This document shows positions 3,680 through 48,195 of a stretch of DNA of 48,195 bases, one piece after another; within the stretch, counting starts at the first letter, position 1, and the number at the start of each line of letters is the position of its first letter. The position numbers and the translations under genes were made by a program. The notes under the pieces are model-generated. The model worked only from the letters and a program-made list of their open reading frames with translations, did no database searches and was not told where the DNA came from. The stretch covers positions 1,232,054-1,280,248 of the forward strand of contig NW_004797386.1 of NCBI RefSeq assembly GCF_000002075.1, read 5' to 3'. The stretch is from Aplysia californica (lineage: Eukaryota).

Positions 3680-4254
3680 AACACCCAGAGCACACTGCCG
3701 ATTGGATCCATCGGATTGAGTTGCGGCCAGCCAGATTTTCCTTCATGTATGGAGGGGGNNNNNNNNNNNNNNNNNNNNNNNNNNNNNNNNNNNNNNNNNN
3801 NNNNNNNNNNNNNNNNNNNNNNNNNNNNNNNNNNNNNNNNNNNNNNNNNNNNNNNNNNCGGCGGCGGCAAAAGCTACCATTTTGGCATAATAAAATACGA
3901 CCTGATTCGAATCACCATCTTGAAATTGAAAAATATAAGCATTTGATTTTGAAAGTTATTTATAATCAAATATAGTTGACATCTGTCATATGTGGTAAAA
4001 AATGGTAGCTTTTGCTCTATCCTGTCACCCATGTGTTCAAATTCTCTAAGTAAGTTTTTACCCTGTCACTCATGTGTTCAAATCGAAATTGAAAAATAAA
4101 AGCATTTGATTTTGTAAGTAAGAATCGAATTTAGCAGAATTCTGTCACATGTGGTAAAAAATGGTAGCCTTTGCTCCATCCACAAAGGAACATCTGACTG
4201 GCCCCCGACTCAATCTGCCGATGAATCCGACTGGTAGCATGAGCACCGGGCGTA
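3680..4254. mobile_element. Non-autonomous DNA element with long diverged inverted ends and internal direct repeats
   Basis: 3690-3757 is the inverted counterpart of 4175-4250. Internal repeat TCTGTCAYATGTGGTAAAAAATGGTAGC x2. Partial copy at ~5628-5713. Confidence 0.55.
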
Positions 4255-4261
4255 ATCATTT

Positions 4262-4701
4262 GTGAGGCATCGTGGTGAAATCAGGCGCTCAACAAAATAA
4301 AGAAATTAGAGACACAGGCATTTGTCTGCCAGTTTGGCAATTTTTAGCGAATTTTTGTTTTTTGGCTCAACTCCATTTATGTCAATATAAAAACATGTTT
4401 CCATGTGAATTTTACAGAAAAACGTTGCTTAAAGGCACAAAATATGTCATTTTTCTATTTTCAAGGACTCTTTAGCTATTGGATTTACCAAACTCTGGTT
4501 GCCATTCTCTCGCTAAATTCACCACTGAAACCAGGAGACCTCACCTCTTTCAATTGCAAATATCTTGATTTCTATTCAAGATAAGTTGGGTTTTTTTTTT
4601 TCACTGAAAGCAACGCAAATAAAATATAAGCTTTCAGATGATACCAATAACTCTACATGCCCAAAAACCGACGAGCGCCTGATTCGACCACGCCGCGATA
4701 C
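4262..4701. mobile_element. MITE with ATTT TSD; partial copies at ~3080-3250, ~7640-8015, ~21970-22172, ~23220-23355, ~35085-35260
   Basis: ATTT|GTGAGGCATCGTGGTGAAATCAGGCGCTC...GAGCGCCTGATTCGACCACGCCGCGATAC|ATTT. Confidence 0.75.
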
Positions 4702-6165
4702 ATTTGTCCCCAGGTGGCACTGCCAATCTCCTGCTGTGGCAAATCCCCGGAACCTGCAGGTCTTTACAGTAGTGTTTCAAAAGGAGGAAACATTTTTTTT
4801 CGTAAGAGTTTTACGACACTTGCAGCACAACAAGGTCATATAAGTGCCCAAGAATAAATGTGTTACAAGAGAGTAACATACATAAGAAAGGAGGGGAGAT
4901 AAAGACGATAAACGTTTGATAGGAAAGAAGAAGCAAACCACACCAGAGCACCCGCCAACAACTACACTCTGATGACTTGACAATAAATAATTCAAATAAA
5001 ACATATATATATTATATCAGAACAGACCAACTATCAAAAATGGCATTCACTCGTTCAAGTGCACATTCCAAAAAAACTTGACGTCAAGCACAATAAAAAT
5101 TCATCAACACAATTGACAATACAGATGATGAGAAAAGGAACACAAAGACACATTAAAAAGTGATATAAAAGTGCTGGGGGAAGGCAAGGATTACCTGTCA
5201 GTTGGAGCTAAAGACCTAACACATACAGACAAAAGTGAGACGTGTGGACAAAATGAGTTACTTCTCGCAATCCGGAAATGGAGATATCGGCCAAAAATTG
5301 ACATTAGGCTCAAATTTGTAGATTTTCCATTGATGCCATATTCTTTAAGCATGGCATGCCTTTTATTATTTCATACTTATAAATTGTAAAAGCTTCACCT
5401 CTATAAGTGTGATGTACTGATTTCATAGGGCTTGAATTCGAGATGTAACTAATTTTGTCAGCAAGCTTCACAAATATATTAGCTTCCATGGCGATAAATG
5501 TACACAATAACCCTCTCCAATCATCATAGAGAGAAATATGGCAAGTAAGAAGTAGGTTGCAGTAGTGCACAGCAAATTCAACGAAACTTGGCTGTGACCT
5601 TCAAAATGAAATCAGTTGTATTGTGCCAAAATGGTAGTTTTGCCCATCCATAAAAGACATTCTGGCAGGCCACTACTCAATCAAACGAATCCGACTGGCA
5701 GTCTGTACTGTGTATAAGCTGTTGTACCTAGGGCCAGAGGTTAGGCCAGTTACTTACTGCAGATAAACAAGTGAAGACTACAGGGGAAAAAGGACGGCAG
5801 TCTCAAACTGAAAATCGTGAGGGGAACCAATTTTGAACGCTTGTTGACTCAAAACTGTATTTCTGTTCAACTGTTGGTTGATTACTGTCGTTAGATTTCC
5901 CATCCAACAACATTTAACAATAAACAACCAGTCAAACAAATATGAAGTTAGGAGTCCACAAGCTTTTAAAATTGGCACCCTCACAAATTCCAGTTTGTGA
6001 CTACAGTCGTCTTTCCCCCTGTAGACTTCAAGCGGGTTGTGATTGAAAAAAAACCAACACCAAAGAGTTCTGATCGAGTACAATCACTCCAGCGACTCCA
6101 TGATACACGACGTGTAGGCCTATGGTGACTATCACAGTGTAAGTACAGGAGAGGGCTCGGCAATT

Positions 6166-6414
6166 CTGCCGTGCCAAGGCAGACCGACGTATCTGCAAAA
6201 ATTAATTTTTGCATCTCCATTTAGATTAAATGGACGCCTATACTCATTCTGCATCTTGTGTCTTAGACAAAAAGACGTATCTGCACTACAAATAGGATAT
6301 TTCACTATGGCAAAAACACGTAACTGAAGGGCAATGCCCATATTTCCAATGGCAACGCAACGTAACTCAAAATCATAAAAAGTGCAGACACGTCGCTCTG
6401 CCTTGGCACGGAAG
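6166..6414. mobile_element. MITE with ~33-bp TIR and AATT TSD
   Basis: AATT|CTGCCGTGCCAAGGCAGACCGACGTATCTGCA...TGCAGACACGTCGCTCTGCCTTGGCACGGAAG|AATT. Confidence 0.8.
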
Positions 6415-7415
6415 AATTAACGCCTGCTCCAACCAACTGACTGACTGACAGAACATAACAACAGGAGATTCGTGTGTGCAGAACCCTTTAGAAAAAGTAC
6501 AGTGAGCGTGGTCAAGACACAGAAAGAGGCTGTCCCCGTTGTTTTATGCACCACGCATACTTAAGCAAAATTTGATCATTTTCCGCATTATTTCTGATTG
6601 TTTTCCTTTATCATTCTTCGTTAAAATAAACAGAATCGCATAATTTCACATTTTTGGGCTCAGTTTGTATAATTTCAGAATTTTTCTTGCATAAAAAGAT
6701 GGGGACAGAAGAGGGCTGGGAGGATGTGTAACTGTCCAAACATTACAGTGTCTTTTTAAAAAAAGTTTTAGTAAGAGTTTTACGGCATTTGCAACACAAT
6801 AAGGTAATATAAATAAGGTAATATAAGAGCTGAAGATTAGAGGTGTTACAAGAGAGTAACAAACAGAAAAAAGAAGGGAGATAAAGACTATAGATGTTTG
6901 ATAGGAAAGAAGAAGCAAGCCACACCAGAGCACCCGCCAACCACCCACACAGTGCCTGTTTGCTTGAGTAAAGAGAATTACGAACATCGACACAATATAT
7001 ATGAAAAATTTAGTGCTTGGAAAATGGACAGATGGAAACAACAGAGAGAAAGAATAGAAGTAGGACCTGACAGAGGCGCCCTCCAACCACCCGCCATTAC
7101 AGTAGTGCGACAGAATGACAACTATTCATCACTTCATCTCCTTACAGTAAACAAAGGTGAGTCTTGTTTAAGTTATGGTACATAAATTGCATTACTGAAT
7201 GTGTCAGTATTTGAAACAAACAAGCAATAGGACAAAAATAAATTATAAAACAACATAAATCCCCAACATCCCCCCCTCCCCTCCAAAAATAAACACACAA
7301 AAGGAAAAAATAGCCAATCGTCCCCTGCCCACCCCCCCCCCCCCAAGGGTGAGTAGAAAGTATCATTCTATGTCGTCCCCTGCCCCCCCCTGAGGTTGAG
7401 AAATCGTAGAAAGTA

Positions 7416-33254: not shown

Positions 33255-36200
33255 TCATTTCCAGTCTGAGGCGTATTTGAAACCTTTTGCCTCCAAGTCC
33301 GCTTTTGCCTCGGCTACTTGCTGCAGACAGAAAAAAAAAAAAAAATGTAAAAACGTCATCATGTTGTATTGTGAATGAGAAAGTCAAATTTTCAAAACTG
33401 ACATATGACAAGACTTTTGCTTAACCCTACCCGTACGCCCTGGGGTCATTTTGTACCCCTGGGGTTGTATTCTTAACATTTTAGAATACTTCTACTGCGA
33501 AGATCTTTTTGAAACTTTCAGTATTTCGCAAAAAATCATTTTGACAGACTGCTATGCAAAGCGTACGGATCGGATTAACAAGTAAATTTCCTCTTTGGAA
33601 AGTGGTAGTAAAACATGACGTACGGATGGATAGGGTTAAAAGATGATTGTTTCATAATTTTGAAGAAGCTGGTTTCAATAATGGTAAGGCATGAGTTCGA
33701 TCCCCGTGTGGGAAGGAGTTTAATCAAGTACGTGTATGTTTATCTTTTTGTTGGGATGTTGTATCCCAATCATCTCTAGTTTAGTTTTAGTAAGTGTTTT
33801 ACGGCACTTGCAACACAATAAAGTCATATAAGTGCCGAAGATTAGAGGCGTTGCAAGAGAGTAACAAACACAAAAAAGAAGGAGGGGAGATAAAGACAAT
33901 AGATATTTGATAGGAAAGAAGGAGCAAACCACACCAGAGCACCCGCCAACCGCCCACAAATCATCCCTCAATAGCCTTGATGATAAACAGGGTCGAGGCA
34001 GCCCATCCCCTACATTATCACAACTGGTATAGCAGTCAAGCACACTGACTGAAGTGTCTTTAGGCCATTCCCAAAGGGGAGACATTTCTCGTTCTAATGC
34101 ACAGTAGAACTGTAAAATGGGCAGATCTAACAATGTCAAGCTCATAACGGTGCCTGAACTACAACAGGAAACTGCTGCTTTTTCTTTCCTAATCCTTACT
34201 ATCGGCATTTTCCTCCACTTCTTTTGTATGTTTGTCACATTCTTGTGACTGGCTATTTTCGGGGTGCCTTGATAGACGAAGCAGACTTTCAGCTGTTGAA
34301 GTGAGAGAGGTGAGCAGGGTAAGTCCGATTCCCTGTAAGGACTTCTCTATTGACATCCACCCCCTTGGCGCTCATATGACATTATGTAGTTGTAAGCGCT
34401 GTAAAACCTCTACTAAAACAACAAACAACGCAGTCAGGCACTTCTCTGTCCCATGTAGGAGACCCCACTGTGATTCCCAAGGGAGGAGAAAAATCTTTTT
34501 GAGTATCTCCGTCTCTCTGCAGGGATGCACCCCTCTCAACCTGCCTTGGCCCTGACAGGCAGGGTCAGAAGCCAGCCTCCTAAGTGATCTAAATTGTGTC
34601 GAAGCGGGCGTAAAAACACCAACATTACTCCACCCCCCCTATAAATAAGCATTTTAATTATTTACAAAACCTTCAGGAAGGTGGGTGGTTGGCGGGTGCT
34701 CTGGTGTGGTTTGCTTCTTCTTTCCTATCAAAAAATCTATCGTCCTTATCTCCTCTCCTTCTTTTTTTATGTTTGTTACTCTCTTGTAACACCTCTAATC
34801 TTCTGGCACTCATATGACCTTATGCAGTTGCGAGCGCTGTAAAACCTCTACTAAAACAAAATCAAACCGTCTGGAAGTCTGTTTCAATATGCATCTAAAC
34901 TTTTTTATACGAAGGGCAAAGTCACAAGCTATTTACAACAACTGAGAAGTGGACACAACAAAGAATGAAACAATCACCTGCTTTAATTCCTCCGATGCTT
35001 CCACACAGTCGTTAAACGTCGTCACTCTGTAGCCAACAACCGCCAGCGAGAAACACTACACAGAAGACAAAAAGAAAGAAATATATGTGTCACAACACGG
35101 TGGAATTATGCGCTCGTCCATTTGTGGGCATATGGAGTTATCGGTATCATCTGAAAGATTGTTCATTTGCCTTGCTTTCGATGAAAAAAAATCTATTTAC
35201 CTAGCTTAAAAGTTGAGATATTTGCGATTGAAGGAGGTGGGGTCATCTGGTTTCAGAAGTAACCAGTTTATGAGGATGCCAAGATTCAGCTGCCAGTAAC
35301 TAGAAAGCGCTTCTCATGTCTTACCTGAATTCTTTTACATTTGCTCGTAGCCAAAGATATAACTCACTTTTACCATCACATTATCAAAGTTGGAAAAAAT
35401 AAACTGTAAGTAAGCAAACATAGGTAGTCTTTATTAAGACTTTGTTTTAGTAAGAGTTTTTGGCACTTGCAACACAATAAGGTCATATAAAAGTGCTGAA
35501 GATTACAGGTGTTACAAGAGAGTAACAAACTCAAAAAAGGAGGAGGGGAGAGAAAGATGATAGATGTTTGACAGGAAAGAAGAAGCAAACCACACCAACC
35601 ACCCGCATTAAGACTTTGATTTTGATCACGCATACTTACAGCAAAAACCATCAGTAGGTACAGCGGTAGCTGAAAACAAAAAGTATAAATAAGGAAAAAT
35701 CAAGTGAAGACTAAAACTTACACTTAAAGGTCAAAGTGCTTGAAAATATTTTTAAATAAGTAAAGTTGAAATTGTACAAGATGGCTACTCATTTTAGTAG
35801 AGATTATCTTCAGACTAAGGACACAACACACAAGACTGAGACAACATATGTACAAATGTTTTAAACTAGTACAATCACCAAAATGCCAGTGTGGAGAGGC
35901 GGACCAAACTGTTGAACACACCTTTCAGCACTGCAAGACACACAGGGCCCTGAGACAGGAAACGTGGCCAACCCCACTGACGCTACAAGAGAAGCTATAC
36001 GGGCCGCCAGATGAACTGAGCAGGATGGCCCAATTTATGACAGATACCAGACTTCAAGTGTGATGCGATCGAGAAGAAGATGAAGAAGAAGAAGATTTTA
36101 GTAGAGGTTTTACGGCGCTCGCAAAGTAGAACTGCATAAGGTCATATGAGAGCCAGAAGATTAGAGGTGTTACAAGAGAGTAACAAACATAAAAAAGAAG

Positions 36201-39200
36201 GGGAGATAAGGATGATAGATGTTTAATAGGAAAGAAGAGGCAAACCACACCAGAGCATCCACCAACCACCCACTACTACTCATTGTGAAGGAGAAAAGGA
36301 GTAGTTTTAGACAGGTGGACGTACTGGACAGTGTCATTGTAGTATAAGAAAAACGTAAGGGCTGAAGTGGAAAGTGGTCGTTGGTACAGATAATTGTCTT
36401 GGACCTGTGGCCATAAGACCAAGTTCCACTGAAAGGATGACGAATTGTGATCGACCTTGAAAAATGAGGAAAGAGTAAAGCTGAAATCACTGAGACGAGG
36501 GCCAACATTATGTTTTGAGCCTGTGCAGGACAAAAACTTGTCCAACATAAAAATAGAATCAAATATATTGGCCCTTTTGGAAATTCAAACTAACCGAGGA
36601 GGAAATATTTTCATTTCAGGCTCGAGAGTAGGCTATGCGTTTAGCCCTGAATCCTGAAAAAAACATAGCGGAAGTCTTGTATTAGCTGCTTCACATGATG
36701 AGGGATCTATTTCTTGCTAACTGACAATTGTCTAAAATATTTATGATCAAGTTATCATGATGAAATGCAATTGCAAAGAAATAATGGGTAAGGTGATTAC
36801 AATTTGTTTGTAAAAAGTCATTATTCCTCCATTGCAATTTTTTTTAAAGAAAGAGAGAACGAGTCTCTTTTAAATCAGTGGACAAGAAAGGGCTGTGCAC
36901 ACACAAAGTCATGGGTTGACCTTTGGTAATACTATTGTGTTCTTCAAGTTAAAGGGTTCCACAGCTCATAAGGTTTCCTAGTTCTTAATCGGTCGCTTCT
37001 ACTTCTAAGCACAAGTGGGCTATCCCGGAAAAAGCTGTTTTGAGAAAATCGAAGGTAAAGTTTTTGGACCCTTGTTCAGTCTCTTTAAAAGACTAGGAGA
37101 GTTTTCTCTAAAACCAAATAAATATACACACCAATGAAATCAAACTTCTCCTATAGGTAGGGCAATGCCCACTTTTCGTGTAGGTCAAGGTTTCTGGAAA
37201 CCTCCAAAATCTGGGTTAGCCCGCTTGTCCTTAAAAGCAACCAATTGACAGCATGCATTAACTTGTCCTTTTTTGTCTAAATGTTTGTCCTATTTAAGGA
37301 CTTATGATGGTATTTTTATTGACCACAATGGTACTGGCACAGAATATATCATTTGCAAAAGAAATGGCTGAAATAACTTACAACAAGGATGACCTCATTC
37401 ATTCCGTCACTCAGGTCAGCCTTGAAGTAGCCTGCGACATATGCTAGCCACACTGACATGAATGAGCCAGCTCCTAGCAACCACTGATACAGTTTAGGAA
37501 GCTGAAAAGACAAACAATCATAAGAACAATTGTATGATACATGATTTAGTTTATTAGGAAATTAAAAGTGCTTGTATATTTCATTCATTAAGGCTAAAAA
37601 ACAAAGGTAACTTGCCGTCCTGTTAGGAAATGCACATCCTTGAAAAAGAATAAATTAAAGTCACTGAAATTTAAAATTGAGCCCAAGAAGTTTTCCAACC
37701 TTTAAAATCTGATCAAAGTTCAGCTAAAGCAAAACTTGTATTGCTGGTTTCAGTAGAGTCTCCCTCTTCCTCATTATTTTTTGCAAAACCACCTCACACA
37801 AATGTACCTGTGTTCATGCATGCGTACACATACTCACACATGATATACAAAGTCAACCCGTACTAGTCACTATTCATGCATTTTAATAAATCAAAACCAT
37901 GTCATATTCATTCTGAATATCTCATAATCTGTCAAAGTCAACTGCTATTCTTTTAACAAATTAGGAAACCCAATTTTCATAACTTAAATTCACAATAACA
38001 AACAGACTGAGGATATATATATAGGAGTCGAGTAAATTCAACAACAGCCTTGCCGGCTCTGACAACATGACCAAAAAGTCCCATCTGTTGTGCAGTTGAA
38101 GGGTGCTCTGGTGTGGTTTACTCTTAAAATTGTTATTATTATCACCATCATCAATATAATGCTATCATTATTAAAATCATCATTATCATTGCCATTGATA
38201 GCATTAAGTTGTTTTTTTGTTTTGATTTTGTTCTTCACTGAATGAAATATGAATATATTATACATGTGATAAATCACAAACCCTTTCATACAATTATGGA
38301 GGAAAGGATGTCGAAAAAAACAAACATTGTAAGTTGAAACTGATGTGAAGATTGAGTCTCTACATCTTTCTTTCCCTTTCTTGCAGGGATGTGACCGTCT
38401 ATAAAGAGAAAAATGCAATAATTGAGCTTATACATCATATTTCCACACCTTAAGCCATGAGGAGATTGGTCTTATAGATGTAACTCTTGATAGAATGATA
38501 AAACGAAAAATTGAGATTGGGCATCTGATTTCCTCATGGAAAGACAAGGGTGGCGATCTGGGGGAGGTAGCTTCAACATTTATGTATATGTATGGATTGA
38601 AAGACCTTATCTAGCCTTTGTTCTGATCATATACGGTCAGCTGCAATGCAGGTTTCAAGGAGTGTCCTTGTGTGACATTTTTATTATTTTATAAAATATT
38701 GTATTTATTATTTAAACATTATTTTACTAAAATTACTTTTTGTCAGTGTTATTGTTCTTAGTATTATTATGATGATGGTGATGAAAATGATTATTTGCTG
38801 TAATCATTGTAGTAGGCAAATTCCAGGTTAAAAATCAGAGATACTGGTTGGTTAAAAGTAGAACCAAACGGGGGGGTGATAAATTCATAGACAGGTTAAA
38901 GAAGTTAAAACAGCACCTAAACTTCGATGGCTGGTGCATCTACAAATAAATTATTGATCGTCAGGTGGTCGTCCCAAGCCTGAGTAAACGCAGAGGGCAA
39001 CTTTTATTTAGCATGTAAATTGTAGTAGTCTTTAGTAGACGAATAGAAAGGAACATCGTGGTAGACAACCAAATTGGCTGATACAAAAAAATTCTCCTGC
39101 TTGCTCCATATGTATTTATAAAACAGTTAAGCACATCATGCAAAAATAAGGACAAACTATAACCACTAAAATATTTTTAAAGCAGCCAACGACAGTCCCA

Positions 39201-42110
39201 AGCCTGTGTAAACGCAGAGGGGGAAAAATAAGTATGTGGATTATTGTAGTAGACAAGTTTAAAAATATACACACAGTGGTATAGACCACCAAATGGACTT
39301 GCTCAAGAAAAATATTTTTCTTCTTGTATATATTATGTATGTGTAAAAGATCAGCTGACTGCATCGTTTCGGTCATATTTTAAAAAAAAGTAATACGTTA
39401 TCAATTGACTCATCATGCATAAATAGCATGTTTTATTGTTACGATAAAGCAAATCTAGTTCCAATAAGATCAGATCTGGATTTGATGCACACACTTCCGT
39501 TCTGATATCAGCATCATAACTGCATTTTATAAACTAAATTTAAATTATGTTTTCCATCAATTCCCAGACAGTTCTTTATTCTGTGTTCACTAGAAAAAAT
39601 AAATGCGACGGTTTTGCGAACTAAGAATGAAAAATTATACAACATTCGTGGACTGCAGTACGGTAGCTGCTTTAAAAAAATAAAAACATGACAAAATTGT
39701 AAATGAATGACTATCTATAAAGTTGAAGCTCTATCATCATTCTTTCCAGTGACACCAAATAGTTTGTTCTATGTTGATTAGAACTAGAGATATATGACGT
39801 TTAGTTTACAGATCAAGTTTAGTCACATTTAATTTGCACAAATTAATTAACATACTTGGACTCATTCTTTACCTTCTGCGCCCCCTAAAGTTTTATTTCA
39901 TCATTTCATTACTTTGATGGTTAACTTAAGGCAAAAACTATACAATATTTTTAAACTATCGCTAGTTCATACACTTTAAAAGGTTTTGCTTCAACATTTA
40001 GATAACGAGTTCAGATATTATCGTAACTATCAGTGATATATATATGCCCTTTTCAGTTAATTTGCATAAATATATATCAAGAAGTTAACATAAATATTTA
40101 ATGATCGCCTGCTCGTACACTTTATAAAGTTTCATCTCATCATTTCGATCATTTTGATGTTGGGGTTTTATTAAGAGGTTTACAGAAAATAATTAAATTA
40201 AGACCAACGATACAAATTTTTGTTATTTAAAGATAAATTTAAACCACATTTAATTTGCATTCGTGAACATATCACTTATTCACATTCATTACTTTGTACG
40301 CCTCCCAAAGTTTTATTTCAACAATCTATTATTCTGATATCCTATATCTCATCATTGGGTTTTTATTCTAATTATTGTCAGCCTAAATACATGTAGGCCT
40401 ACTGCAAATTGTCCTTTTTTCGCTTGACGAATCCAGTTCGCAAAAATTAACTATAATAGTTAAACGAATGCTTGCTCTTTACTTTATACTTTAAAAGGTT
40501 TCGTCTCATCATTTCAGTCGTTTTGATGTATGGATTTAGGGGTATAGTTCCATAAAATAAAAAATAACAGTGATTTGCCCTTTTAGGCTAATTTGCATAA
40601 ATTAACATAAATCATAACGATCGTAATAATTAGCAACTACACTTTATCAAAGTTTCATCTCAACATTGGGGTCATTTTGAAATGGAGGTTAAGAGGTTTA
40701 TTATTGTAAACTTAATAAGAATCAGAGATTAAACTTTTCTGTATACACAGATCAATTTAAATCATCTAATTTGCATAATAAATTAATATACTTGTACACA
40801 TTCATTACCTTGTACGGCTCCTCAAGTCTTATTTCTACAATCCATTATTTAATCATAATGTCTGGGTCATTGTTGTTTTTAAAAATTATTTTAGGCAAAA
40901 AAACGTCAAACATGTCCTTTTTTCTCTATGAATCTGATTAATTTGCATAAATTAACAAAATATTTTAATGAATGCTTGCTCTTATACTTAAACAGGCTTC
41001 GTCACAACATTTAGGTCGTTTTGATGTATGGGTTCAGGGGTATAGTACGATAAACAACAGCGGTATGCCTTTTTCAACTTAATCAATTTTTCGGTCACAA
41101 TTTTGACGTCATTTTTTTCTCTGTTTAAATAATCATTTTTGCGTTACAAAAGAAGCCATGGCGATTGTTAAGATTCCCGCGTTTAATTCCGATGTGCGTT
41201 TTTCATACCCTCAGGCATATTTCGCTTTGGTCCCTAACCTTAACCCTAACCCTAACCCTAACCCTAACCCTGGCCCTAACCCTAACCCTAACCTAGGGTT
41301 AGGGACCAAAGCGAAATATGCCTGAGGGTATGAAAAACGCACACATCGGAATTAAGGCCACCTCTATTCTCACCCGGAGTGAGAATAGTGCAGGCGAGTC
41401 TTGTGGCTATTCTCACCCGGTGCGCGTTCACCCTAAACCACAAAATTCTACACTGTGATAACAGAAAAATTGTAGAATTCTGTGCCGTGAACAAACGTTC
41501 CATTACAATTGTAGCCTACTAAAAGCGAACAGTTTTGTCTGTGGGCAGTGGAGAGAGAGAGAGAAAGAGAGAGAGGAGTAGCGCGAGAATTTCCGGGCAA
41601 AACAAAATGGCGACCCGCGTAGTTCGGCTCGATTTGAAAAGTTAAATAGCCGTAGCATCTTTGTAGACAACCAAATTTATTTACTTTTGTGTTTTAACAT
41701 CATTTTTTAACTTTGTTTTGGTCAATTTGATCGTCCACACCGATAGACAGTATTCAGAAAGAGACGGAGAGAGAGAGAAGAGGGGAGGAGTTGATCTTGC
41801 GAGAACTTCCGGGCGGGTGAGAATAGCCACTTTCCGGAATTAAACGCGGGAATCTTAACAATCGCCGAAGCCATAACTTTAGTTCTAATTATCATAGAAT
41901 GATAAATTTGGCACCACTGGAAAGCATTTCTCAAGCTGCATCCACCTATTGTAAAATTTTTCATCTGTGATAAATTTGAAATTTTCATGAGACATAACTA
42001 CCTACCTCATCAACTCATTTCATTGCTACTGCATCATCTAAAAAATTTTTAACATTGTGATTCAATTGTAAAAATATAAAGGAGTACATATGCCGGTCAC
42101 TTACCCCCAT
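33255..42110 (-). CDS. DPM3: Dolichol-phosphate mannosyltransferase subunit 3, 5 coding exons, 99 aa
   Basis: Exons (minus): 42110-42105 (ATGGGG|gtaagt), 37501-37382, 35669-35640, 35055-34978, 33320-33255; all phase 0, GT-AG. Protein: MGLPKLYQWLLGAGSFMSVWLAYVAGYFKADLSDGMNEVILVLPLYLLMVFACFSLAVVGYRVTTFNDCVEASEELKQQVAEAKADLEAKGFKYASDWK. It has two TM helices, the GYRVxTFxDCxxAxxEL motif and a C-terminal coiled coil. The 6-nt first exon is the least certain part. Confidence 0.93.
33425..33635. mobile_element. piggyBac-type MITE, second copy
   Basis: TTAA flanks; similarity to 22752-22999. Confidence 0.8.
34030..34425 (+). mobile_element. Family B: ~300-390-bp I/Nimb-type LINE 3' UTR or SINE (representative copy)
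   Basis: ...AGGCCATTCCCAAAGGGG...TTGACATCCACCCCTTGGCGCTCATATGAC...GTAAAAC. Other copies at 768-1160(-), 2355-2686(-), 28654-29043(-), 47367-47664(+). Isolated tails at ~30078, ~45436 and ~46773. Confidence 0.8.
34430..34625 (+). mobile_element. Third tRNA-derived SINE family with I/Nimb-type tail (second copy at ~27885-28020)
   Basis: Both copies share CATGYAGGAGACC...GGCAGGGTC-GAAGCC-GCCTCCTAARTGATCTAA. The 27885 copy keeps A/B-box-like motifs. Confidence 0.6.
34681..34860 (+). mobile_element. Family A: ~170-bp headless retro-element with I/Nimb-type 3' hairpin (representative copy)
   Basis: GTGGGTGGTTGGCGGGTGCTCTGGTGTGG...GGCACTYATATGACCTTAT...GTAAAAC(TAAAAC)n. Other copies at about 2808-2988(-), 3480-3644(-), 4802-4961(-), 6765-6946(-), 10579-10751(+), 10885-11071(-), 26396-26575(-), 28425-28589(-), 32455-32579(-), 33777-33957(-), 35443-35605(-), 36096-36273(-), 44961-45092(+), 47018-47192(+), 47665-47843(+). 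Confidence 0.85.
35800..36095 (+). mobile_element. Ingi/Nimb-like LINE 3' fragment
   Basis: IIFRLRTQHTRL...CQCGEADQTVEHTFQHC zinc knuckle followed by a (GAA)n tail. Confidence 0.8.
38902..39003 (+). ncRNA. Twister ribozyme-like motif, copy 1, degenerate, with P3 insertion
   Basis: AAGTT...GCACCT-(insert)-AGGTG-GTCGTCCCAAGCCTGAGTAAACGCAGAGGGC-AACTT. P1 is AAGTT/AACTT, P3 is CACCT/AGGTG, and the L4 and GAGGG core match copy 2. Confidence 0.55.
39172..39230 (+). ncRNA. Twister (P1-type) ribozyme-like motif, copy 2, partly degenerate
   Basis: TTTT-TAA-AGCA-GCC-AAC-G-ACAG-TCCCAAGC-CTGT-GTAAA-CGCA-GAGGG-GGAAA. It has the UAA cleavage loop, GUCCCAAGC L4, P4 ACAG/CTGT, T1 TCCC/GGGG, T2 GC/GC and the GAGGG core. 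P2 has two mismatches. Confidence 0.7.
39820..41095. repeat. AT-rich diverged tandem array, ~170-230-bp units
   Basis: AATTTGCA(T/C)A at ~39831, 40059, 40252, 40590, 40768, 40940, each followed by an AAAGTTT(C/T)AT(C/T)TCA-like motif. Confidence 0.7.
41160..41866. mobile_element. Non-autonomous DNA transposon, Merlin-like (32-bp TIR, 8-bp TSD), containing a (CCCTAA)n hairpin
   Basis: Perfect TIR GGCGATTGTTAAGATTCCCGCGTTTAATTCCG. TSD GAAGCCAT at 41152-41159 and 41867-41874. The GGNRM terminus with an 8-bp TSD fits Merlin/IS1016. Confidence 0.8.
41232..41304. repeat. Interstitial telomere-type repeat (CCCTAA)n ending in an inverted TAGGGTTAGGG
   Basis: About 10 CCCTAA-like units followed by CTAGGGTTAGGG. 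Confidence 0.9.
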
Positions 42111-42567
42111 CACAGCTAGATTAAGATTAGCTATGCACGGACCAGACTCATCACAGTCTAACTGACGCAATTATTGATGTGGCACCGCGAGCGTGACAAT
42201 GTAAACAAAAGCCGGCAGATTACCCAAACTTTTTCACGTCGAATGGGAAGCAATGTTTTTTCAACAGCTGTGAGATGAGTGGCGGAGTGGTGTCCCTTCA
42301 GGTTTTTACACGACACCTGCCGTTCATTTCGACACTCGCGACAGGCAATATTTTGCGCTTTCTAGCGTTTTTCTGTTTTGAGCAACACCACTTCCTGTCT
42401 TTTGCTATACAATCTTCATCGATGACCCCAGACGCCGCTGGGCAACTTCTCATAAACGAAACCCCACCCCTTCCTCGTCGACGAGTCAACTCCCCCTCAC
42501 AAACACATTAAATTTGCCTACCACCGGCTGTTGCGTTTTCCTGCGGTGGGATCGTGTAACTGCCGTG
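42111..42567. promoter_or_regulatory. Bidirectional promoter between DPM3 and SLC35C1
   Basis: Only 457 bp separate the divergent ATGs. CpG-rich, with TGACGCAA (ATF/CEBP-like) at 42163, CACTTCCTG (ETS) near 42390 and CCCCACCCC (Sp/KLF) near 42462. Confidence 0.7.
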
Positions 42568-45500
42568 ATGTGGAAGGATAACGAAGGCTCATCAAGGGGA
42601 CGTTACCATTCACGCAGCAACGTTGACACATCAATATCACAACGCATCAACATGGAATCGCTTGTTTCTAAGTACATCAGAATTGCCTCCGTGGTGGCAG
42701 CATATTGGTAAGTATTACTTTTCCGTAGAGGTTTGTGCTCTTTTATCAATCCCTCTACATTTGTGAGTTGTTTTGAAAGTGCACAGGATGCTGATACTTT
42801 CGTTTGCAGTTTCAATGAGCTCAACAAACTGCTGAGTGGGCCGCCCGCCTCTGAGATGAGGGACTTTTGCAGATTTTGTTGAAGACTTTACTCTAAGAAA
42901 ACTGGTCTAAGATAGCACTCCACTCAACAGAGTGTCTAAACATAAACTGCAATTGAAAAATGTTACGTGGCAGGAGAGAGAGAGAGAGANNNNNNNNNNN
43001 NNNNNNNNNNNNNNNNNNNNNNNNNNNNNNNNNNNNNNNNNNNNNNNNNNNNNNNNNNNNNNNNNNNNNNNNNNNNNNNNNNNNNNNNNGGGGGGGTGTT
43101 TACAGATTGTTAAGCCCATGCTTATAATAGAGTTAGATATCTAGATCTAGATCTCTAGATCTAGTTTCACATTCTGATGAAGTGTCAAAATTAAAACACA
43201 TCTTTACTTGAAAAGAATGGGTTCATGGAGGGCTTCCAATCATCTGCAAGAATCTACAAAAAGATGCCTAAAATACACACTGCATTGATTGTATAGAGGC
43301 CTAAAAGTAAAAGGTTACAAAAGATCTTCTCTGTGCAGCAGATGTAAGTTCACGTCTCAATGCTTACTAGATCTAGAATCTATGTTAGACTTCTGCATAG
43401 CATTTTGGCACTAATACTGACCACTCCAGACATTTTATTCTGTTCTTGAGTGGTGCAAATTCTCATCCTTTTGAACTACTCTAGGTGTTAGCAGTCTGTT
43501 CTTGGGAATGGAAAAAAAAAGTCTGCCCTATCATGTTCAGTAGTTTTAATTATAGGATACCACAGGGCTCTGTATTAGGACCATTTGTACACAACACCAC
43601 TTAGTTCCATCAGAAAAAAATCAGAATAGTTCTAAATCACTTTTGTATAGACGGCACCCAGCATGTCCTCAGAGCCAGAGAACATGCATGCATCTAATAG
43701 CTAGCTCAAAGATGACAAATGTAGACAAAGACCTAGATGGCATCCCAACAAAATGAGGTTAAACAAAGATTATTATATATATATATATAAGACTGAACAA
43801 ATAATTTTATACATCTTTGGGTCTTTGGTGACACAATTTGATGTGACTAATCATGTCATGATCTTGTTGTGGGAAATGAGAGATTGATTTTTAAAGCAAA
43901 GGCCAAAAATTATGGCCACTTTTTGGGCAACTTTTGCCGCTTTTTGTGGCAACTTTTGGACAAAAAAATGGCAACAAACGCAGAAGCTAGATATATAGTA
44001 GATATATAGTCATATCATTCATAAACATTAGGTTTTATTTGCTGGTTTGTTTTGTACATTTCAGGACCATCTCCATTTCCATGGTGTTTGTGAACAAATA
44101 TCTGCTGAGCAGTGAAAGTGTCAAGGTGAGTTGTACCTTTTTTTTATTACTGGCTGGGCCCCTTTTCGATGAAAGGGAATGAAGGGTACATTTACATCAA
44201 TGGAAAGTCTTTGGCCTACTATATTTGCACTCTACTGGAATGGAGTAATAAATCCTGCGAGATGAAAAAAACTATAATCTAAACTATCTATATAGTAATG
44301 TATAGATTGATTCTCTATTCCGCTTTTGTGGTTGAACACTCCAGAATTTCAAAGGTGGGGAAAAAGTACGCACGGCTAGTGAATGGAAACCTCACTTGTT
44401 TACAATGGCGTCTTCTTAGAAGATGGACTTTCTCAAGATTAGATCTAAACGAAACTAATGAAAAACTGAAATTTAAACTACGGTGACTTCAGGCTTTTCA
44501 ATAGAAATGTGCACCATTTTAATGATTCTGAACCACCATAAATTTTGTCAAATTCGAAAGTTAAGTGGTTCTGAAGTTTTAGGCAGCCAAAGTGACGAAC
44601 TTTCACAAATATTATATCATGTAGAGATAATGACTGCCTTTGTTTACAATTCTTGGTTTTTGTGAAACGAATAAAGAACTAAAGAATTGCTTTTCAAATA
44701 CAGTTGAAAATTTATTTGTATGAAAACAAAGCCATTTACTTCAATATTGTGTACGATACAAGGCTAGATGTTTTTTTTCTTTAAAAAAAAGATAGGAGTT
44801 ATTGTGTGTTTACCAAGTTCCCTTTCAACGCGGTGTGATCTAAGAGAGAAAGGACTTCAATTTTATTTCCAAACTAATTGCCTACCTCTGTTAGAGCTAA
44901 GCTAAGAGGATGTGGAGAGCATCTTGTTTAAATTCGTCTGTAATAATAATAATGGATTGCATTTATCTCCCCTTCTTCTTTTTTATGTTTGTTACTCTCT
45001 TGTAACACTGCTAATCTTCTGGTGCTGATATGACCTTATATATATATATATAAATGCAGTTGTGAGTGCCGTAAAACCTCTACTAAAACAAAAAAGACTT
45101 TTGTGACCAATTTGTGTTGCAAGTGCCGTAAAACTCTTATGGTACAAAAAAGACCACAACTGTCTGTTTGAAAACCCTGCGGGGTCCACATCTGGCTAAA
45201 CAAAACATTGGTTTTGAGATACCAAGCAGGCCAAGATAAAGATTGTTTTGAGCTGTTGGGTAAGCTGTTTCTCTTTCCCGTCCATGTCTTCAGTGGTATA
45301 GTTCTTCTCATTCATCGTGTTTTAGTTGTAACATTTTTTGTATGTTTTTGTCATGTCTTAGCCTTATCTCTGTTTCTCCTTAGGGAATTTGTCAACACAC
45401 AAACCCAAACCTAGACCCCCACCCTTAGATAAGCTATTTTTAGTTTTAGTTTTAGTTTTAGTAAGGTTTTACGGCGCTCGCAACTGCACAAGGTAAGCTA

Positions 45501-46414
45501 TTTTTAGGATCATAGATCATTGATAACAATGATATTAATTGTTATAGTGGAGATAATTTCTTTAGTGTTTCCTCTTGTACAGTATAGCTCTAGGGGATTT
45601 ACAATAGCTTGATGTTAACACAAAATTCATGTACTTAAACATACATGCATACATAAGCGTTGTCTTAAGATTAACACTAGCGCATAAGCTGACATTAATA
45701 CTACCACAGTCCAAATAAATAATAATATTATAATATGATGTAAATAGTAAGTACGAAATTAAGTAGCACGAAGAAATATGCTGGCTCATCATATCAGCAA
45801 TGTTTGATAATTTATTTTTGCTTTCTTTTCTTCCTCTCCAGTTGAATGCGCCAATGTTCATCACCTGGTTTCAGTGTGTGGTCACTGTTCTGCTTTGCTT
45901 CCTGCTCAGTATCGGGGGACAGCTGTTCCCACAGTTTGTTTCGTTTCCTGCTGTGAAGCTGGAAGGCAAGCTGATCAGAGCTGTGAGTCGATCCTACTTT
46001 TTGTTTGCCCCTTTTTTCCCTCCCTTTCTTGTCTTAAAGTATGAATTAGGCCTACATCTACTTTCCATTGTGGGCTTATGAATTAGAAATGTTGAGACCA
46101 TGAAAGAAGCCTACAAGCTGCAGTCTTCCACCCCCCCCCCTCCCCCCTCCCCCCTCCCCCACAAAAAACAACAACGAAAAAAAAGCACAACATTTTTTTT
46201 CCAGGAAAATGATATTCATGATTTGTATAAAATGTATGCTGTATTGAAGAACAAACTATTTTGATCATGTATGATAATGTTGCGTTGTTGTCCCCAGACC
46301 CTGCCCTTGTCCATCGTGTTTGTGTCGATGATCACGTTCAACAACTTGTGCCTGAAGTACATCGGTGTCGCCTTCTACTTCGTCGGTCGCTCGCTCACCA
46401 CCGTGTTCAATGTG
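42568..46414 (+). CDS. SLC35C1: GDP-fucose transporter 1 (5' part; gene continues beyond the window)
   Basis: Exons 42568-42707, 44065-44125, 45842-45982, 46298-46414, GT-AG and in frame. Translation ...[48 protein letters not shown]...[39 protein letters not shown] matches the SLC35C1 signature. Confidence 0.95.
43490..43770 (+). mobile_element. Decayed CR1/L2 reverse-transcriptase fragment
   Basis: [10 protein letters not shown] motif (ggataccacagggctctgtattaggacca) followed by a degenerate YADD region. Confidence 0.55.
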
Positions 46415-46481
46415 GTAAGTTCCTACTTGTGTCTGTTTCTCTATCTCAAATTTTGTGCCCATGTTTTCCGCTAACCACGAT

Positions 46482-46647
46482 AGTAATAATAATAAATGAC
46501 ATTTGTATAGCGCTCAACCCCGATTAAAGTACACAGGCTCTGAGCGCTTTACAATACCGTACAACGTACAACAGTAACATAAAACGTTGTGTTCTAACTG
46601 AAAGAAAATTACTCCAAATATTCATCTTGTTAATTTAAAAACAGAAA
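46482..46647 (-). mobile_element. L2-like LINE 3' end, same family as 1426-2010
   Basis: Direct sequence similarity to 1433-1600. Confidence 0.8.
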
Positions 46648-48195
46648 GGCAATGGTTATAAATGAGAAAATTCTCAGCATAACATTTCCAGTAATTTTTT
46701 TCCATTGTCAGGAAAAGAATAGGGAAAAAGGATTTTGATAAATTTTAAGCATGAAATATTAATTTACCCTATTTTCTGCAGTTGTTGCGAGCGCCGTAAA
46801 ACCTTATACTACTACTACTATTTTCTGCAGTTTCCCTTATTTTTTCATAGTATAATAATGCCTTGTATTTGTTTTTGATCCTACCCTGGTCTTTCTCGTT
46901 GAGCTTGGGTGGTTGGTTGGCGCACTGGTGTGGTTTGCCCGTTCTATCCTTGCAAACATCTATTGTCCCTATTTTTCGCCCTCTTTTCTTTGCATTCCAC
47001 TCCCTAGTAGTACCATGGGAGGTTGGTGGGTGCTCAGGTGTGGTTTGCTCCTTCTTTCCTATCCACCATCTATGGCCCTTATCAATCTCTCCTCTTGCTT
47101 ATCTTAGTATGCCGCTCTCTGGTAATACCTCTTATCTTTGGCACTTACATGATGACCTACTTGTGTGGTAAATGACGTACAGCTTTTACTCATCTGTCCT
47201 CGTCGTTTTATGCAAGAAAAATTCTGAAATTATGCAAACTGAGCCCAAAAATGTGAAATTATGCGATTCTGTTAATTTTAACAAAGGATGATAAAGGAAA
47301 ATAATCAGAAATTATGCAAAAAAATGATAAAATTTTGCTAAATTATGCGTGGCACATAAAACCACGAATTGTAAATGGGCTGATTTTTCAATGTCATGCT
47401 CATACTGTGCCGGAACAACATAGGGGGAACTGCTACTTTTACTTTCCTCTCGTAATTTTATCCTCTACTTCCTTTGTATGTTTGTCACTCTCTTGTGAAC
47501 TGCTATTTCCGGAGTGCCTTGATAGTGGAAGCAGACTTTGTGCTGTAGAGGCTAGAGAGGTAAGCGGAGTAAGTCTGATTCCCTGTTTGGACTTCTCTGT
47601 TGACATCCACCCCTTGGTTCTCATATGACTGTATGCAGCTGCGAGCTCCGTAAAACCTTCCTAAGTGGGTGGTTGGTGGGTGCTCTGGTGTGGTTTGCTC
47701 TTTCTTTCCTATGAAACACCTATCATCCTTATTTCTCCTCCTTTTTTTTTGTGTACGTTACTCTCTTGTTACGAGTAATCTATTCTTCCGCACTTATATG
47801 ACCTTATTGTGTTGCAAGTGCCGTAAAACTCTTACTAAAACTAAGTGTCTAGGGACCAGTATCATCATTACCGTGTAGACTAACGGGAAACAAAAGCTCA
47901 GCACCTCAACATCTGATTTATAAAGTTGGAAAATTCAAAACGCATAGAGCATGCTGTAAAGTGTGGATATGGGCTATATTTATATGCAATCATTATTATT
48001 ATGATTATTGTTATAATTTATTATTATTTTTATTATTATTATTATTATTATTATTTATTTGTACATTGCCAACTTACTTTTCCTTTGCTTGTCAGTATTT
48101 TTTTTTGCCTGCAGCTTTGTGCTTGAGGTGCTTGGAATTTGCTGAAAACTTTTGCCATTTGTTTGCTTGTTTTATGTTTTATTTTCCATTTCTGT

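What the first reader, a model, noticed from the sequence alone, without database searches (positions are those of the whole stretch)
38800..39370. Tandem twister-ribozyme array (twister 'retrozyme'-like) in DPM3 intron 1
Seen: two copies of GTCCCAAGCCTG(A/T)GTAAACGCAGAGGG lie 224 bp apart, each within a diverged ~220-bp unit, with traces of a third unit upstream. Copy 2 (39172-39230) aligns almost position by position with the compact P1-type twister as I recall it (rice: CC-UAA-CACU-GCC-AAU-GCCG-GUCCCAAGC-CCGG-AUAAA-AGUG-GAGGG). It shows a compensatory P4 (ACAG/CTGT) and intact T1/T2 pseudoknot nucleotides. The predicted cut is U39178|A39179. Copy 1 has a different P1 (AAGTT/AACTT) and an extra P3 (CACCT/AGGTG). 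Known: tandem 150-400-bp units each with a hammerhead are metazoan non-LTR retrozymes that release circular RNAs, whereas animal twisters are mostly described singly at RTE-LINE 5' ends. Inference: this is a decaying copy of a tandem, twister-based, non-coding mobile or circular RNA family. No RT ORF flanks it. It lies antisense to DPM3, so the host pre-mRNA would not be cut. P2 mismatches (AGCA/CGCA instead of TGCG/CGCA) suggest these copies are weak or dead.
Basis: partly seen in the sequence, partly recalled or inferred. Interest (0 to 1): 0.85.

Follow-up and report, generated by a model that had tools for sequence, protein, structure and literature searches.

The report
Decayed twister ribozyme pair
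Two neighbouring remnants of a known self-cutting RNA (the twister ribozyme) really are here, but one is only half a ribozyme and the other carries disabling mutations, so this is an ordinary fossil and not an active tandem or circular-RNA element.

Summary
The sequence observation holds. Two 27-nt twister cores (38971-38997, 39195-39221; 26/27 identical) lie 224 bp apart, and about 140 nt after each core is also homologous.

Copy 2 (39174-39225, + strand) is a compact type-P1 twister without P3. It scores 45.5 bits on Rfam RF03160 (E 5e-8 to 9e-9 locally), below the curated cut-off of 67.2. L1, L2, L4, P4 and both pseudoknots are intact. P2 keeps only 2 of 4 pairs.

Copy 1 is not a twister. 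Its supposed 5' half is the 3' tail of an abundant, unrelated ~155-bp repeat, and no covariance-model hit appears even at E <= 10.

The pair lies inside a 3.07-kb repeat-rich segment (38095-41159) that exists in three diverged copies. Each copy carries a different lesion. The twister parts have drifted as fast as their flanks. A 31-bp minisatellite changes the core spacing to 224, 283 or 474 bp.

The 27-mer occurs only seven times in the genome, and no other short-period twister array was found. No RT/EN ORF lies within 9 kb downstream.

Verdict: decayed relics of a real local twister family. The retrozyme-like reading is not supported. Two other reports of this scan found better twisters elsewhere in this genome, behind tandem kinase genes.

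The parts
39174..39225 (+). Copy 2: a complete but crippled compact type-P1 twister without P3. The layout is P1 UUUU/GGAA, L1 UAA, P2 AGCA/CGCA (2 of 4 pairs), GCC, P4 ACAG/CUGU, L4 UCCCAAGC, GUAAA, GAGGG.
   Evidence: Rfam RF03160 gives 45.5 bits (GA 67.2) and E 8.8e-9, covering the model 1-68. Pair counts against 11 other twisters of this genome are. The nested canonical fold is +0.7 kcal/mol, against -5.5 for the C134 paralog.
39178..39179 (+). Predicted scissile bond U|A of copy 2.
   Evidence: It follows from the position of the L1 UAA in the CM alignment. Twisters cleave at U-A in L1, leaving a 5'-AA end (PMC8501958). Cleavage itself was not tested.
38967..39003 (+). Copy 1: only the 3' part of a twister (L4, P4 3' strand, GUAAA, P2 3' strand, GAGGG). 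The 27-nt core is 38971-38997.
   Evidence: It is 26/27 identical to copy 2. No twister CM hit appears at E <= 10. The cleavage-site strand is missing.
38812..38970 (+). 3' tail of an abundant ~155-bp retroposon-like repeat that occupies the place of copy 1's 5' half.
   Evidence: 426 first-look candidates genome-wide, at 72-87% identity. More than 20 loci end at the same ...GGTCAGGT terminus and then diverge. Twenty of these loci were scanned and none has a twister hit.
38967..39173 (+). Tandem unit 1 (core 1 plus spacer 1).
   Evidence: nhmmer with the two-unit profile gives E 1.7e-52. Spacer homology has z = 8.9.
39191..39418 (+). Tandem unit 2 (core 2 plus spacer 2).
   Evidence: nhmmer gives E 6.6e-63. 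No further unit is found in 36000-43000 at E < 10.
39103..39139 (+). Single monomer of a 31-bp minisatellite lying between the two cores.
   Evidence: There are 3.1 copies in the C134 paralog and 9.0 in the C180 paralog. Core spacing is therefore 224, 283 or 474 bp.
39530..39683 (+). Possible third, heavily degraded unit. A P4-like GACAG...CUGUGU frame is kept but the loop is mutated.
   Evidence: Local alignment to unit 2 gives z = 2.4, and 29 of 1000 shuffles reach the score. This is marginal.
38095..41159 (+). 3.07-kb repeat-rich segment present in three diverged copies: this one, C134 at about 119287-122359 (-), and C180 at about 3847-7139 (-). It carries both twister remnants.
   Evidence: BLAST identity is 84-90%, and 92-96% for substitutions only. 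C134 and C180 share flanks with each other but not with the window. The segment is a mosaic of other dispersed repeats.
34972..35076 (-). The only detectable DPM3 exon (Pfam DPM3 positions 43-77), 3.7 kb away on the opposite strand.
   Evidence: PF08285 gives 32.5 bits, above its cut-off of 25. The translation shows AG acceptor and GT donor context. Exon 1 was not found.

Best explanation
The locus holds two adjacent fossils of a type-P1 twister self-cleaving ribozyme. They belong to a P3-less 'compact' subfamily that is dispersed in this genome.

Inferred history:
1. A twister-bearing stretch of about 220 bp was duplicated in tandem.
2. For a long time both ribozyme cores were kept almost identical while the spacers drifted to 56% identity.
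3. The 5' half of the upstream copy was then replaced by, or abutted to, the tail of an abundant retroposon-like repeat.
4. The whole neighbourhood (3.07 kb) was later copied to three genomic places.
5. Since then it has decayed neutrally.

In its intact form such an RNA folds into P1-P2-P4 with two pseudoknots and cuts itself at U|AA by general acid-base catalysis. That mechanism is established for the family and was not tested here.

In the window, copy 2 keeps the cleavage site and all conserved loops, but two of its four P2 pairs are broken. It is therefore probably inactive or very weak. Copy 1 has no cleavage-site strand at all. No ~224-nt RNA can be excised from this locus, so it is not a working tandem or circular-RNA element.
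For: - Copy 2 is a significant but sub-threshold twister-P1 match with every conserved loop in place.
- It is a relative of bona fide local twisters. An intact 52-nt compact copy on C13 (51.3 bits) has a 7-bp P1 and a perfect P2, and 17 further loci match it, in most of them over little more than the ribozyme.
- Twelve twisters of this genome support P1, P2, P4 and T1 by covariation: 96% of cells pair, 6 pairs change on both sides, and slid controls give 32-62%. The window copy supplies two of the unpaired P2 cells.
- The three paralogs carry different lesions. The window has U39181A, plus an A.C mismatch at 39184/39213. C134 and C180 have A39179U at the scissile adenine, which leaves a '1A' L1. 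1A variants did not cleave in vitro (PMC8501958).
- The twister parts diverge between paralogs as fast as their flanks: 94.2 vs 93.3%, 92.2 vs 92.5%, and 98.0 vs 96.5%.
- Copy 1's 5' side is an unrelated abundant repeat.
- Core identity of 26/27 against 56% in the spacers has P = 3e-6.
- The family is tiny and no other short-period pair exists.
- No RT/EN or any other Pfam domain was found in the ORFs tested: + strand ORFs of 60 aa or more from 42275 to the window's end (none that long lies between copy 2 and 42275), and two - strand ORFs within the segment.
Against: - Activity was not measured. Tertiary contacts can rescue weak helices, so residual cleavage by copy 2 cannot be excluded.
- The Rfam score is below the gathering threshold, as it is for every twister in this genome (best 65.4 bits).
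- The strong core-versus-spacer contrast shows past constraint on both cores. That also fits an ancestral functional two-ribozyme unit.
- No RNA data could be consulted.
Confidence: 0.67

Rival explanations
1. This is the relic of a twister-based, retrozyme-like non-autonomous element. In that model, tandem ~220-bp monomers each carried a twister. They were transcribed as multimers, self-cleaved to monomers, circularised by a host ligase and copied back by a LINE or PLE reverse transcriptase. The locus would be a dead dimer or trimer.
For: - The two units are homologous and in the same orientation, with a short period of 224 bp and low GC of about 33-35%. Animal hammerhead retrozymes have 150-450-bp monomers, range 'from dimers to large multimers', and have GC below 45% (PMC7229834).
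- The cores are far better conserved than the spacers.
- A marginal third unit lies downstream.
Against: - Only one independent locus exists; the three copies share the same repeat insertion and both units.
- No other twister pair closer than about 2.2 kb was found among 66 cores.
- Monomers inserted together should diverge equally in core and spacer after insertion, and they do not.
- The period varies between paralogs.
- The upstream unit lacks its cleavage site.
- No paper found in the searchable library describes such twister arrays.
Confidence: 0.12
2. These are remnants of the 5' ends of twister-led non-LTR (RTE/Perere-3-type) retrotransposons or their SINEs. There the ribozyme trims the element's RNA from upstream read-through transcripts. 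The two units would be adjacent or duplicated 5' UTRs.
For: - Twister variants sit at the 5' end of Perere-3 elements. The TSD abuts the AA of the cleavage site and supplies the P1 5' strand (PMC8501958).
- Truncated but active twisters are reported at RTE 5' ends (PMC7761336).
- The local compact form also lacks P3.
Against: - No APE/RT domain appears in the + strand ORFs of 60 aa or more that were tested in the 9 kb downstream, nor in the two - strand ORFs tested inside the segment.
- In this genome, homology between twister copies does not start at the cleavage site. It runs from about -4 to -42 upstream and stops a few nt after P1.
- The better twisters that could be checked lie downstream of protein-kinase exons, not upstream of RT genes.
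Confidence: 0.15
3. Copy 2 is still a working host-recruited ribozyme, for example one that processes an antisense or intronic transcript of this locus.
For: - All catalytic and pseudoknot nucleotides, and the UAA site, are intact in the window copy.
- The genome-wide pattern of conservation limited to the twister suggests function for some copies.
Against: - P2 has 2 of 4 pairs, and the nested fold is +0.7 kcal/mol against an alternative MFE of -11.5.
- The paralogs show neutral-rate change, including hits at critical positions.
- There is no transcript evidence.
Confidence: 0.06

Closest known systems
Type-P1 twister ribozyme (Rfam RF03160; Roth et al. 2014 family)
   Same: Copy 2 has the same order of elements and the same conserved nucleotides: UAA, GCC, GUCCCAAGC, GUAAA and GAGGG. 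The P1/P2/P4 frame and the T1/T2 complementarity are also the same.
   Different: P3 is absent. P2 is reduced to two pairs. P1 is made only of A-U and G.U pairs. The score is 45.5 bits, below the 67.2 cut-off. Copy 1 is only a 3' half.
Twister variants at the 5' end of Perere-3/RTE LINEs (Liu et al. 2021, PMC8501958; de la Pena et al. 2020, PMC7761336)
   Same: Both are animal genomic twisters in repeated DNA, and truncated compact forms exist in both. L1 variation matters in both: the paralogs' single-A L1 matches the '1A' class, which was inactive in vitro.
   Different: No APE/RT ORF lies downstream. Homology among local copies does not begin at the cleavage site. The arrangement here is a short tandem.
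Metazoan non-LTR retrozymes with type I hammerheads (Cervera and de la Pena 2020, PMC7229834)
   Same: Both have short, AT-rich, same-strand tandem units of a few hundred bp that are meant to carry one self-cleaving ribozyme each.
   Different: The ribozyme class is twister, not hammerhead. There are two units and only one complete ribozyme. The family has about 4 loci instead of thousands of copies. The spacing is unequal, and there is no circRNA evidence.
Twisters downstream of tandem protein-kinase genes in this same genome (scan notes s1-680729, s1-721667)
   Same: They belong to the same local twister lineage, sharing P1 ACAUUUU, UAA, P2 UGCA and GCC. Conservation is confined to the ribozyme.
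   Different: No kinase remnant was found in the window or in the sequence held around the two paralogs (up to about 7 kb upstream for C134 and 14 kb for C180), even at tblastn E <= 10. Those copies keep P3 and score 48-65 bits.

Membership tests
twister-P1 ribozyme (RF03160), copy 2 | Covariance-model score at or above Rfam's gathering threshold | tested here: not met
   45.5 bits against 67.2. The E-value is nevertheless 8.8e-9 to 2.6e-6. No twister of this genome reaches the threshold; the best is 65.4 bits.
twister-P1 ribozyme (RF03160), copy 2 | Conserved loop nucleotides: L1 UAA with the scissile U-A, GCC, L4 GUCCCAAGC, GUAAA, GAGGG | tested here: met
   All are present in the CM alignment and in the alignment with 11 local twisters.
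twister-P1 ribozyme (RF03160), copy 2 | Helices P1, P2 and P4 base-paired | tested here: inconclusive
   P4 has 4 of 4 pairs, with a compensatory G-C to A-U change relative to local relatives. P1 has 2 A-U and 2 G.U pairs. P2 has only 2 of 4 pairs (A.A and A.C mismatches).
twister-P1 ribozyme (RF03160), copy 2 | Pseudoknots T1 (CCC/GGG) and T2 (GC/GC) | tested here: met
   The complementary bases are present. T1 covaries (C-G to U-A) across 5 of 11 distinct local sequences.
twister-P1 ribozyme (RF03160), copy 2 | Site-specific self-cleavage | not testable with these tools
   This needs an in vitro transcription and cleavage assay.
twister-P1 ribozyme (RF03160), copy 1 | Complete motif including the cleavage-site strand (P1 5', UAA, P2 5', GCC) | tested here: not met
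   No hit to any Rfam family at E <= 10. The upstream sequence is the terminus of an unrelated abundant repeat.
metazoan non-LTR retrozyme | Tandem monomers of 150-450 bp, each with a complete self-cleaving ribozyme | tested here: not met
   There are two units, but only unit 2 has a complete motif. The spacing is 224, 283 or 474 bp among the paralogs.
metazoan non-LTR retrozyme | Multi-copy family dispersed as arrays in the genome | tested here: not met
   The 27-mer occurs 7 times genome-wide. Spacer sequences have only the paralogs plus two partial matches on C136. No other close twister pair exists.
metazoan non-LTR retrozyme | Expression as monomeric linear and circular RNA | not testable with these tools
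twister-led RTE/Perere-3-type LINE 5' end | APE/RT ORF within about 10 kb downstream on the same strand | tested here: not met
   Between copy 2 and 42275 there is no + strand ORF of 80 aa or more. The + strand ORFs of 60 aa or more from 42275 to 48195 have no Pfam hit at E <= 0.01. Two - strand ORFs inside the segment have none either.
twister-led RTE/Perere-3-type LINE 5' end | Copies share sequence from the cleavage site onwards and differ upstream (TSD at the AA) | tested here: not met
   Among local twister copies, homology includes 4-42 nt or more upstream and ends shortly after P1.

The most novel reading that the evidence does not exclude
The two (perhaps three) units could be the last trace of a twister-based counterpart of the animal hammerhead retrozymes. 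That would be a small non-coding tandem element whose monomers were excised by twisters and circularised. It would be the first sign that twisters, like hammerheads, founded such a family in animals.
Probability: 0.1. Interest if true: 0.6.

Novelty: new member of a known kind. Interest (0 to 1): 0.25.

Why it matters
By itself it matters little. It adds a decayed, sub-threshold member to a known ribozyme family in a genome that has dozens of better copies.

It is useful in three ways:
- It is a calibration case. A 27-nt perfect-looking twister core can be only half a ribozyme, fused to an unrelated repeat.
- The three paralogs are a small natural mutagenesis series: P2 broken, the scissile A lost, and a G.U in P2.
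- The contrast of 96% core identity against 56% in the spacers, together with the twister-only conservation seen at many other loci of this genome, indicates that twisters here were (and some perhaps still are) under selection in settings that are not LINE 5' ends. That is the more interesting question to follow, at other loci.

Tried and rejected
- The Rfam gathering scan of the whole window found nothing. The twister appears only with E-value thresholds.
- Copy 1 as a twister with a long P3 is rejected.
- The upstream third unit is rejected as not significant. My first downstream test was flawed by overlapping coordinates and was redone.
- An apparent homology of the unit's spacer to the C436 twister family (nhmmer E 1.7e-6) runs through a (TA)n tract and is not credible.
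- MFE folding does not recover the canonical fold for any compact copy, intact ones included, because T1 competes in nested models. MFE alone is therefore uninformative.
- The kinase-remnant search in the window and paralogs was negative.
- Pfam scans of nearby ORFs were negative.
- DPM3 exon 1 was not found.
As a result, the contexts of the 6.8-kb-spaced twisters on C127, of the 2.2-3.4-kb-spaced ones on C815, C1589 and C546, and of the possible duplicate on C146 could not be examined.
- The N run near 42960-43090 was left untouched.
Full report
**1. What is in the sequence**

The copies are 224 bp apart and 26/27 identical. No match appears in 100 dinucleotide-preserving shuffles, even with three mismatches allowed.

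The Rfam gathering scan of the whole window reports nothing. With E-value thresholds, one family stands out. Twister-P1 (RF03160) matches 39174-39225 over the full model (1-68) at 45.5 bits. The E-value is 8.8e-9 in 751 nt, 4.7e-8 in 4 kb and 2.6e-6 at genome scale. The curated cut-off is 67.2 bits, so formally this is sub-threshold.

The alignment gives these elements:
- P1 UUUU/GGAA
- L1 UAA, with the scissile bond at U39178|A39179
- P2 AGCA/CGCA, with two non-pairs
- GCC
- no P3
- P4 ACAG/CUGU
- loop UCCCAAGC, then GUAAA and GAGGG

**2. Copy 1 is half a ribozyme**

A 131-nt search around copy 1 finds no Rfam family at E <= 10. A genome search with 38780-39370 shows that 38812-38966 belongs to an abundant repeat, with 426 first-look candidates at 72-87% identity.

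In more than 20 fetched loci this repeat ends at the same ...GGTCAGGT terminus and the sequences then diverge completely. Twenty of those loci were scanned and none contains a twister.

Copy 1 is therefore only the 3' part of a twister (L4, P4 3', GUAAA, P2 3', GAGGG) joined to an unrelated repeat. It has no cleavage-site strand.

**3. The tandem duplication is real but small**

The ~140 nt following each core align significantly (z = 8.9; 0 of 500 shuffles reach the score). A two-unit nhmmer profile finds exactly two units in 36000-43000: 38967-39169 and 39191-39418.

The upstream 'third unit' is not significant (z = 0.2-0.7). A possible third, badly degraded unit lies downstream at about 39530-39683, but it is marginal (z = 2.4; 29/1000).

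The spacers are 56% identical and the core is 26/27 identical. Given the spacer rate, the probability of that core identity is 3e-6. Both cores were therefore kept, by constraint or conversion, long after the duplication.

**4. The pair sits in a three-copy segment and has decayed neutrally since**

Window 38095-41159 (3.07 kb) has two paralogs, on C134 and C180, at 84-90% BLAST identity. C134 and C180 share flanks with each other but not with the window.

The segment is a mosaic of other dispersed repeats and contains a ~520-bp internal duplication. All three copies have the same repeat/half-twister junction and both units.

A 31-bp minisatellite between the cores has 1, 3.1 and 9.0 copies in the three paralogs. 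The core spacing is therefore 224, 283 and 474 bp.

Within twister 2 the paralogs differ at functionally critical positions:
- The window has A at 39181, breaking the first P2 pair.
- The window has A at 39184 opposite C39213.
- C134 and C180 have an intact P2 (UGCG/CGCA, and UGCG/UGCA with a G.U).
- C134 and C180 carry U instead of the scissile adenine at the position of 39179, which leaves a single A in L1.

Twister variants with one A in L1 showed no cleavage in vitro (PMC8501958).

Substitution-level identity in the twister parts equals that of the flanks: 94.2 vs 93.3%, 92.2 vs 92.5%, and 98.0 vs 96.5%. Nothing indicates selection since the segment was copied.

The nested canonical fold of the window copy is +0.7 kcal/mol, against -5.5 for C134.

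**5. Family context in this genome**

RF03160 finds 62 scored hits, the best at 65.4 bits and none above threshold. They share P1 ACAUUUU, UAA, P2 UGCA (or UCAG) and GCC.

On an alignment of 12 of them (11 distinct rows), the P1/P2/P4/T1/T2 structure pairs in 96% of cells, with six pairs changed on both sides. Slid controls give 32-62% and none or one such pair. One of the double changes is the T1 switch from CCC/GGG to CUC/GAG. These are therefore genuine twisters, and copy 2 is a degraded member.

An intact 52-nt compact copy on C13 (51.3 bits) has 17 further matches in the genome. In most of them the match covers little more than the ribozyme. Between the larger subfamilies, homology is likewise limited to about -17..+60 around the cleavage site.

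The exact 27-mer family is tiny: seven occurrences, six of them in the three paralogs and one a decayed singleton on C477. A looser core pattern finds 66 sites against 0 in the reversed control. No other two sites lie closer than about 2.2 kb.

Notes from this scan (s1-680729, s1-721667) say that twisters in this genome follow tandem kinase genes. I could confirm protein-kinase exons (Pfam PF00069, E 1e-18 and 1.6e-21) about 1 kb upstream, in sense, of the twister in L021 and L001, and by tblastn in L002. I found no kinase remnant in the window or in the sequence held around the two paralogs, which reaches about 7 kb upstream for C134 and 14 kb for C180.

The same notes name the organism as Aplysia californica. 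I recall an Aplysia assembly of about the size and contig count given. I did not test the identification.

**6. Surroundings**

Between copy 2 and 42275 there is no + strand ORF of 80 aa or more. The + strand ORFs of 60 aa or more from 42275 to the window's end have no Pfam match, and neither do two - strand ORFs inside the segment.

The only detectable DPM3 exon is at 34972-35076 on the minus strand. The twisters are antisense to it, but exon 1 was not found. 'Intron 1' therefore remains unverified.

**7. Interpretation**

The best-supported reading is a pair of decayed twister relics. One is complete but crippled, and the other is a 3' half. They lie inside a low-copy duplicated segment.

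The retrozyme-like reading borrows real features. Animal hammerhead retrozymes are AT-rich tandem units of 150-450 bp, 'from dimers to large multimers' (PMC7229834). It fails on four counts: copy number, completeness of the upstream ribozyme, fixed period, and the unequal divergence of core and spacer. Co-inserted dead monomers should not show that last feature.

The LINE-5'-end reading (PMC8501958; PMC7761336) fails for two reasons. No RT/EN ORF was found, and local homology does not begin at the cleavage site.

I found no paper in the searchable library that describes short-period genomic twister arrays in animals.

**8. What could not be done**

**Verdict**

This is a real but ordinary fossil of a known ribozyme family. 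Interest is low. There is a small residual chance that it descends from a twister-based tandem element.

Noticed in passing
window 41183-41355: About 25 bp past the right end of the 3-kb segment lies a telomere-type repeat. (CCCTAA) runs for about 10 copies at 41232-41293 and then turns into its complement, forming a 173-bp imperfect palindrome (76%). Similar CCCTAA runs occur in loci L003 and L051.
   Followed up: partly
window 39103-39139; L064 2065-2159; L062 5626-5910: A 31-bp minisatellite between the two twister cores is present as 1, 3.1 and 9.0 copies in the three paralogs.
   Followed up: yes
window 40042-40556 and 40573-41054: An internal tandem duplication of about 520 bp (70% identity) lies inside the three-copy segment. 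Shorter related pieces are at 39805-39918.
   Followed up: no
L001, L002, L021 (C627, C2384, C546): Protein-kinase exons (PF00069 in L001 and L021; tblastn only in L002) lie about 1 kb upstream, on the same strand, of well-preserved twisters. This agrees with other notes of this scan on tandem kinase genes ending in twisters. Same-contig twisters recur at 2.2-30 kb spacing in one orientation (C815, C1589, C102, C546, C127).
   Followed up: partly
L001-L030; genome places listed: Across twister subfamilies and at the 17 further loci that match the compact C13 copy, sequence similarity is mostly confined to the ribozyme itself (about -17..+60, or -4..+7 beyond P1), with unrelated flanks. This pattern suggests selection on the RNA. 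A short hairpin (GACUU-CGGA-AAGUC) directly upstream is shared by several subfamilies.
   Followed up: partly
alignment A3 (12 local twisters): There is clean compensatory covariation in pseudoknot T1 (GUCCC...GAGGG against GUCUC...GAGAG) and in P2 (UGCA/UGCA against UCAG/CUGA).
   Followed up: yes
window 38812-38970; L039, L040, L055: An abundant ~155-bp repeat has a sharply defined 3' end (...GGTCAGGT, sometimes followed by CAGGT-like short repeats) and a terminal stem-loop. It looks like a SINE or LINE 3' tail. In three loci two copies lie 130-420 bp apart.
   Followed up: partly
window 38270-38776 and 36096-36273: Two further abundant dispersed repeats are present. One is ~500 bp (292 first-look candidates, about 70% identity). 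The other is ~178 bp and was seen in many fetched loci in both orientations. A related start sequence (GGTGCTCTGGTGTGG) marks the left edge of the three-copy segment at 38095.
   Followed up: no
G000:C146:542400-542928: The only extended paralog of the intact C13 compact-twister locus gives two overlapping BLAST pieces offset by about 89 bp around the twister. This means either a small insertion or a local duplication. It could not be fetched.
   Followed up: no
window 42603-42711 (+): An ORF ending ...[19 protein letters not shown] lies in a relatively GC-rich stretch (41000-43000, GC 0.40-0.45) next to an N run at about 42960-43090. It may be the first exon of a + strand gene facing DPM3. 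This was not examined, and the N run was left alone.
   Followed up: no
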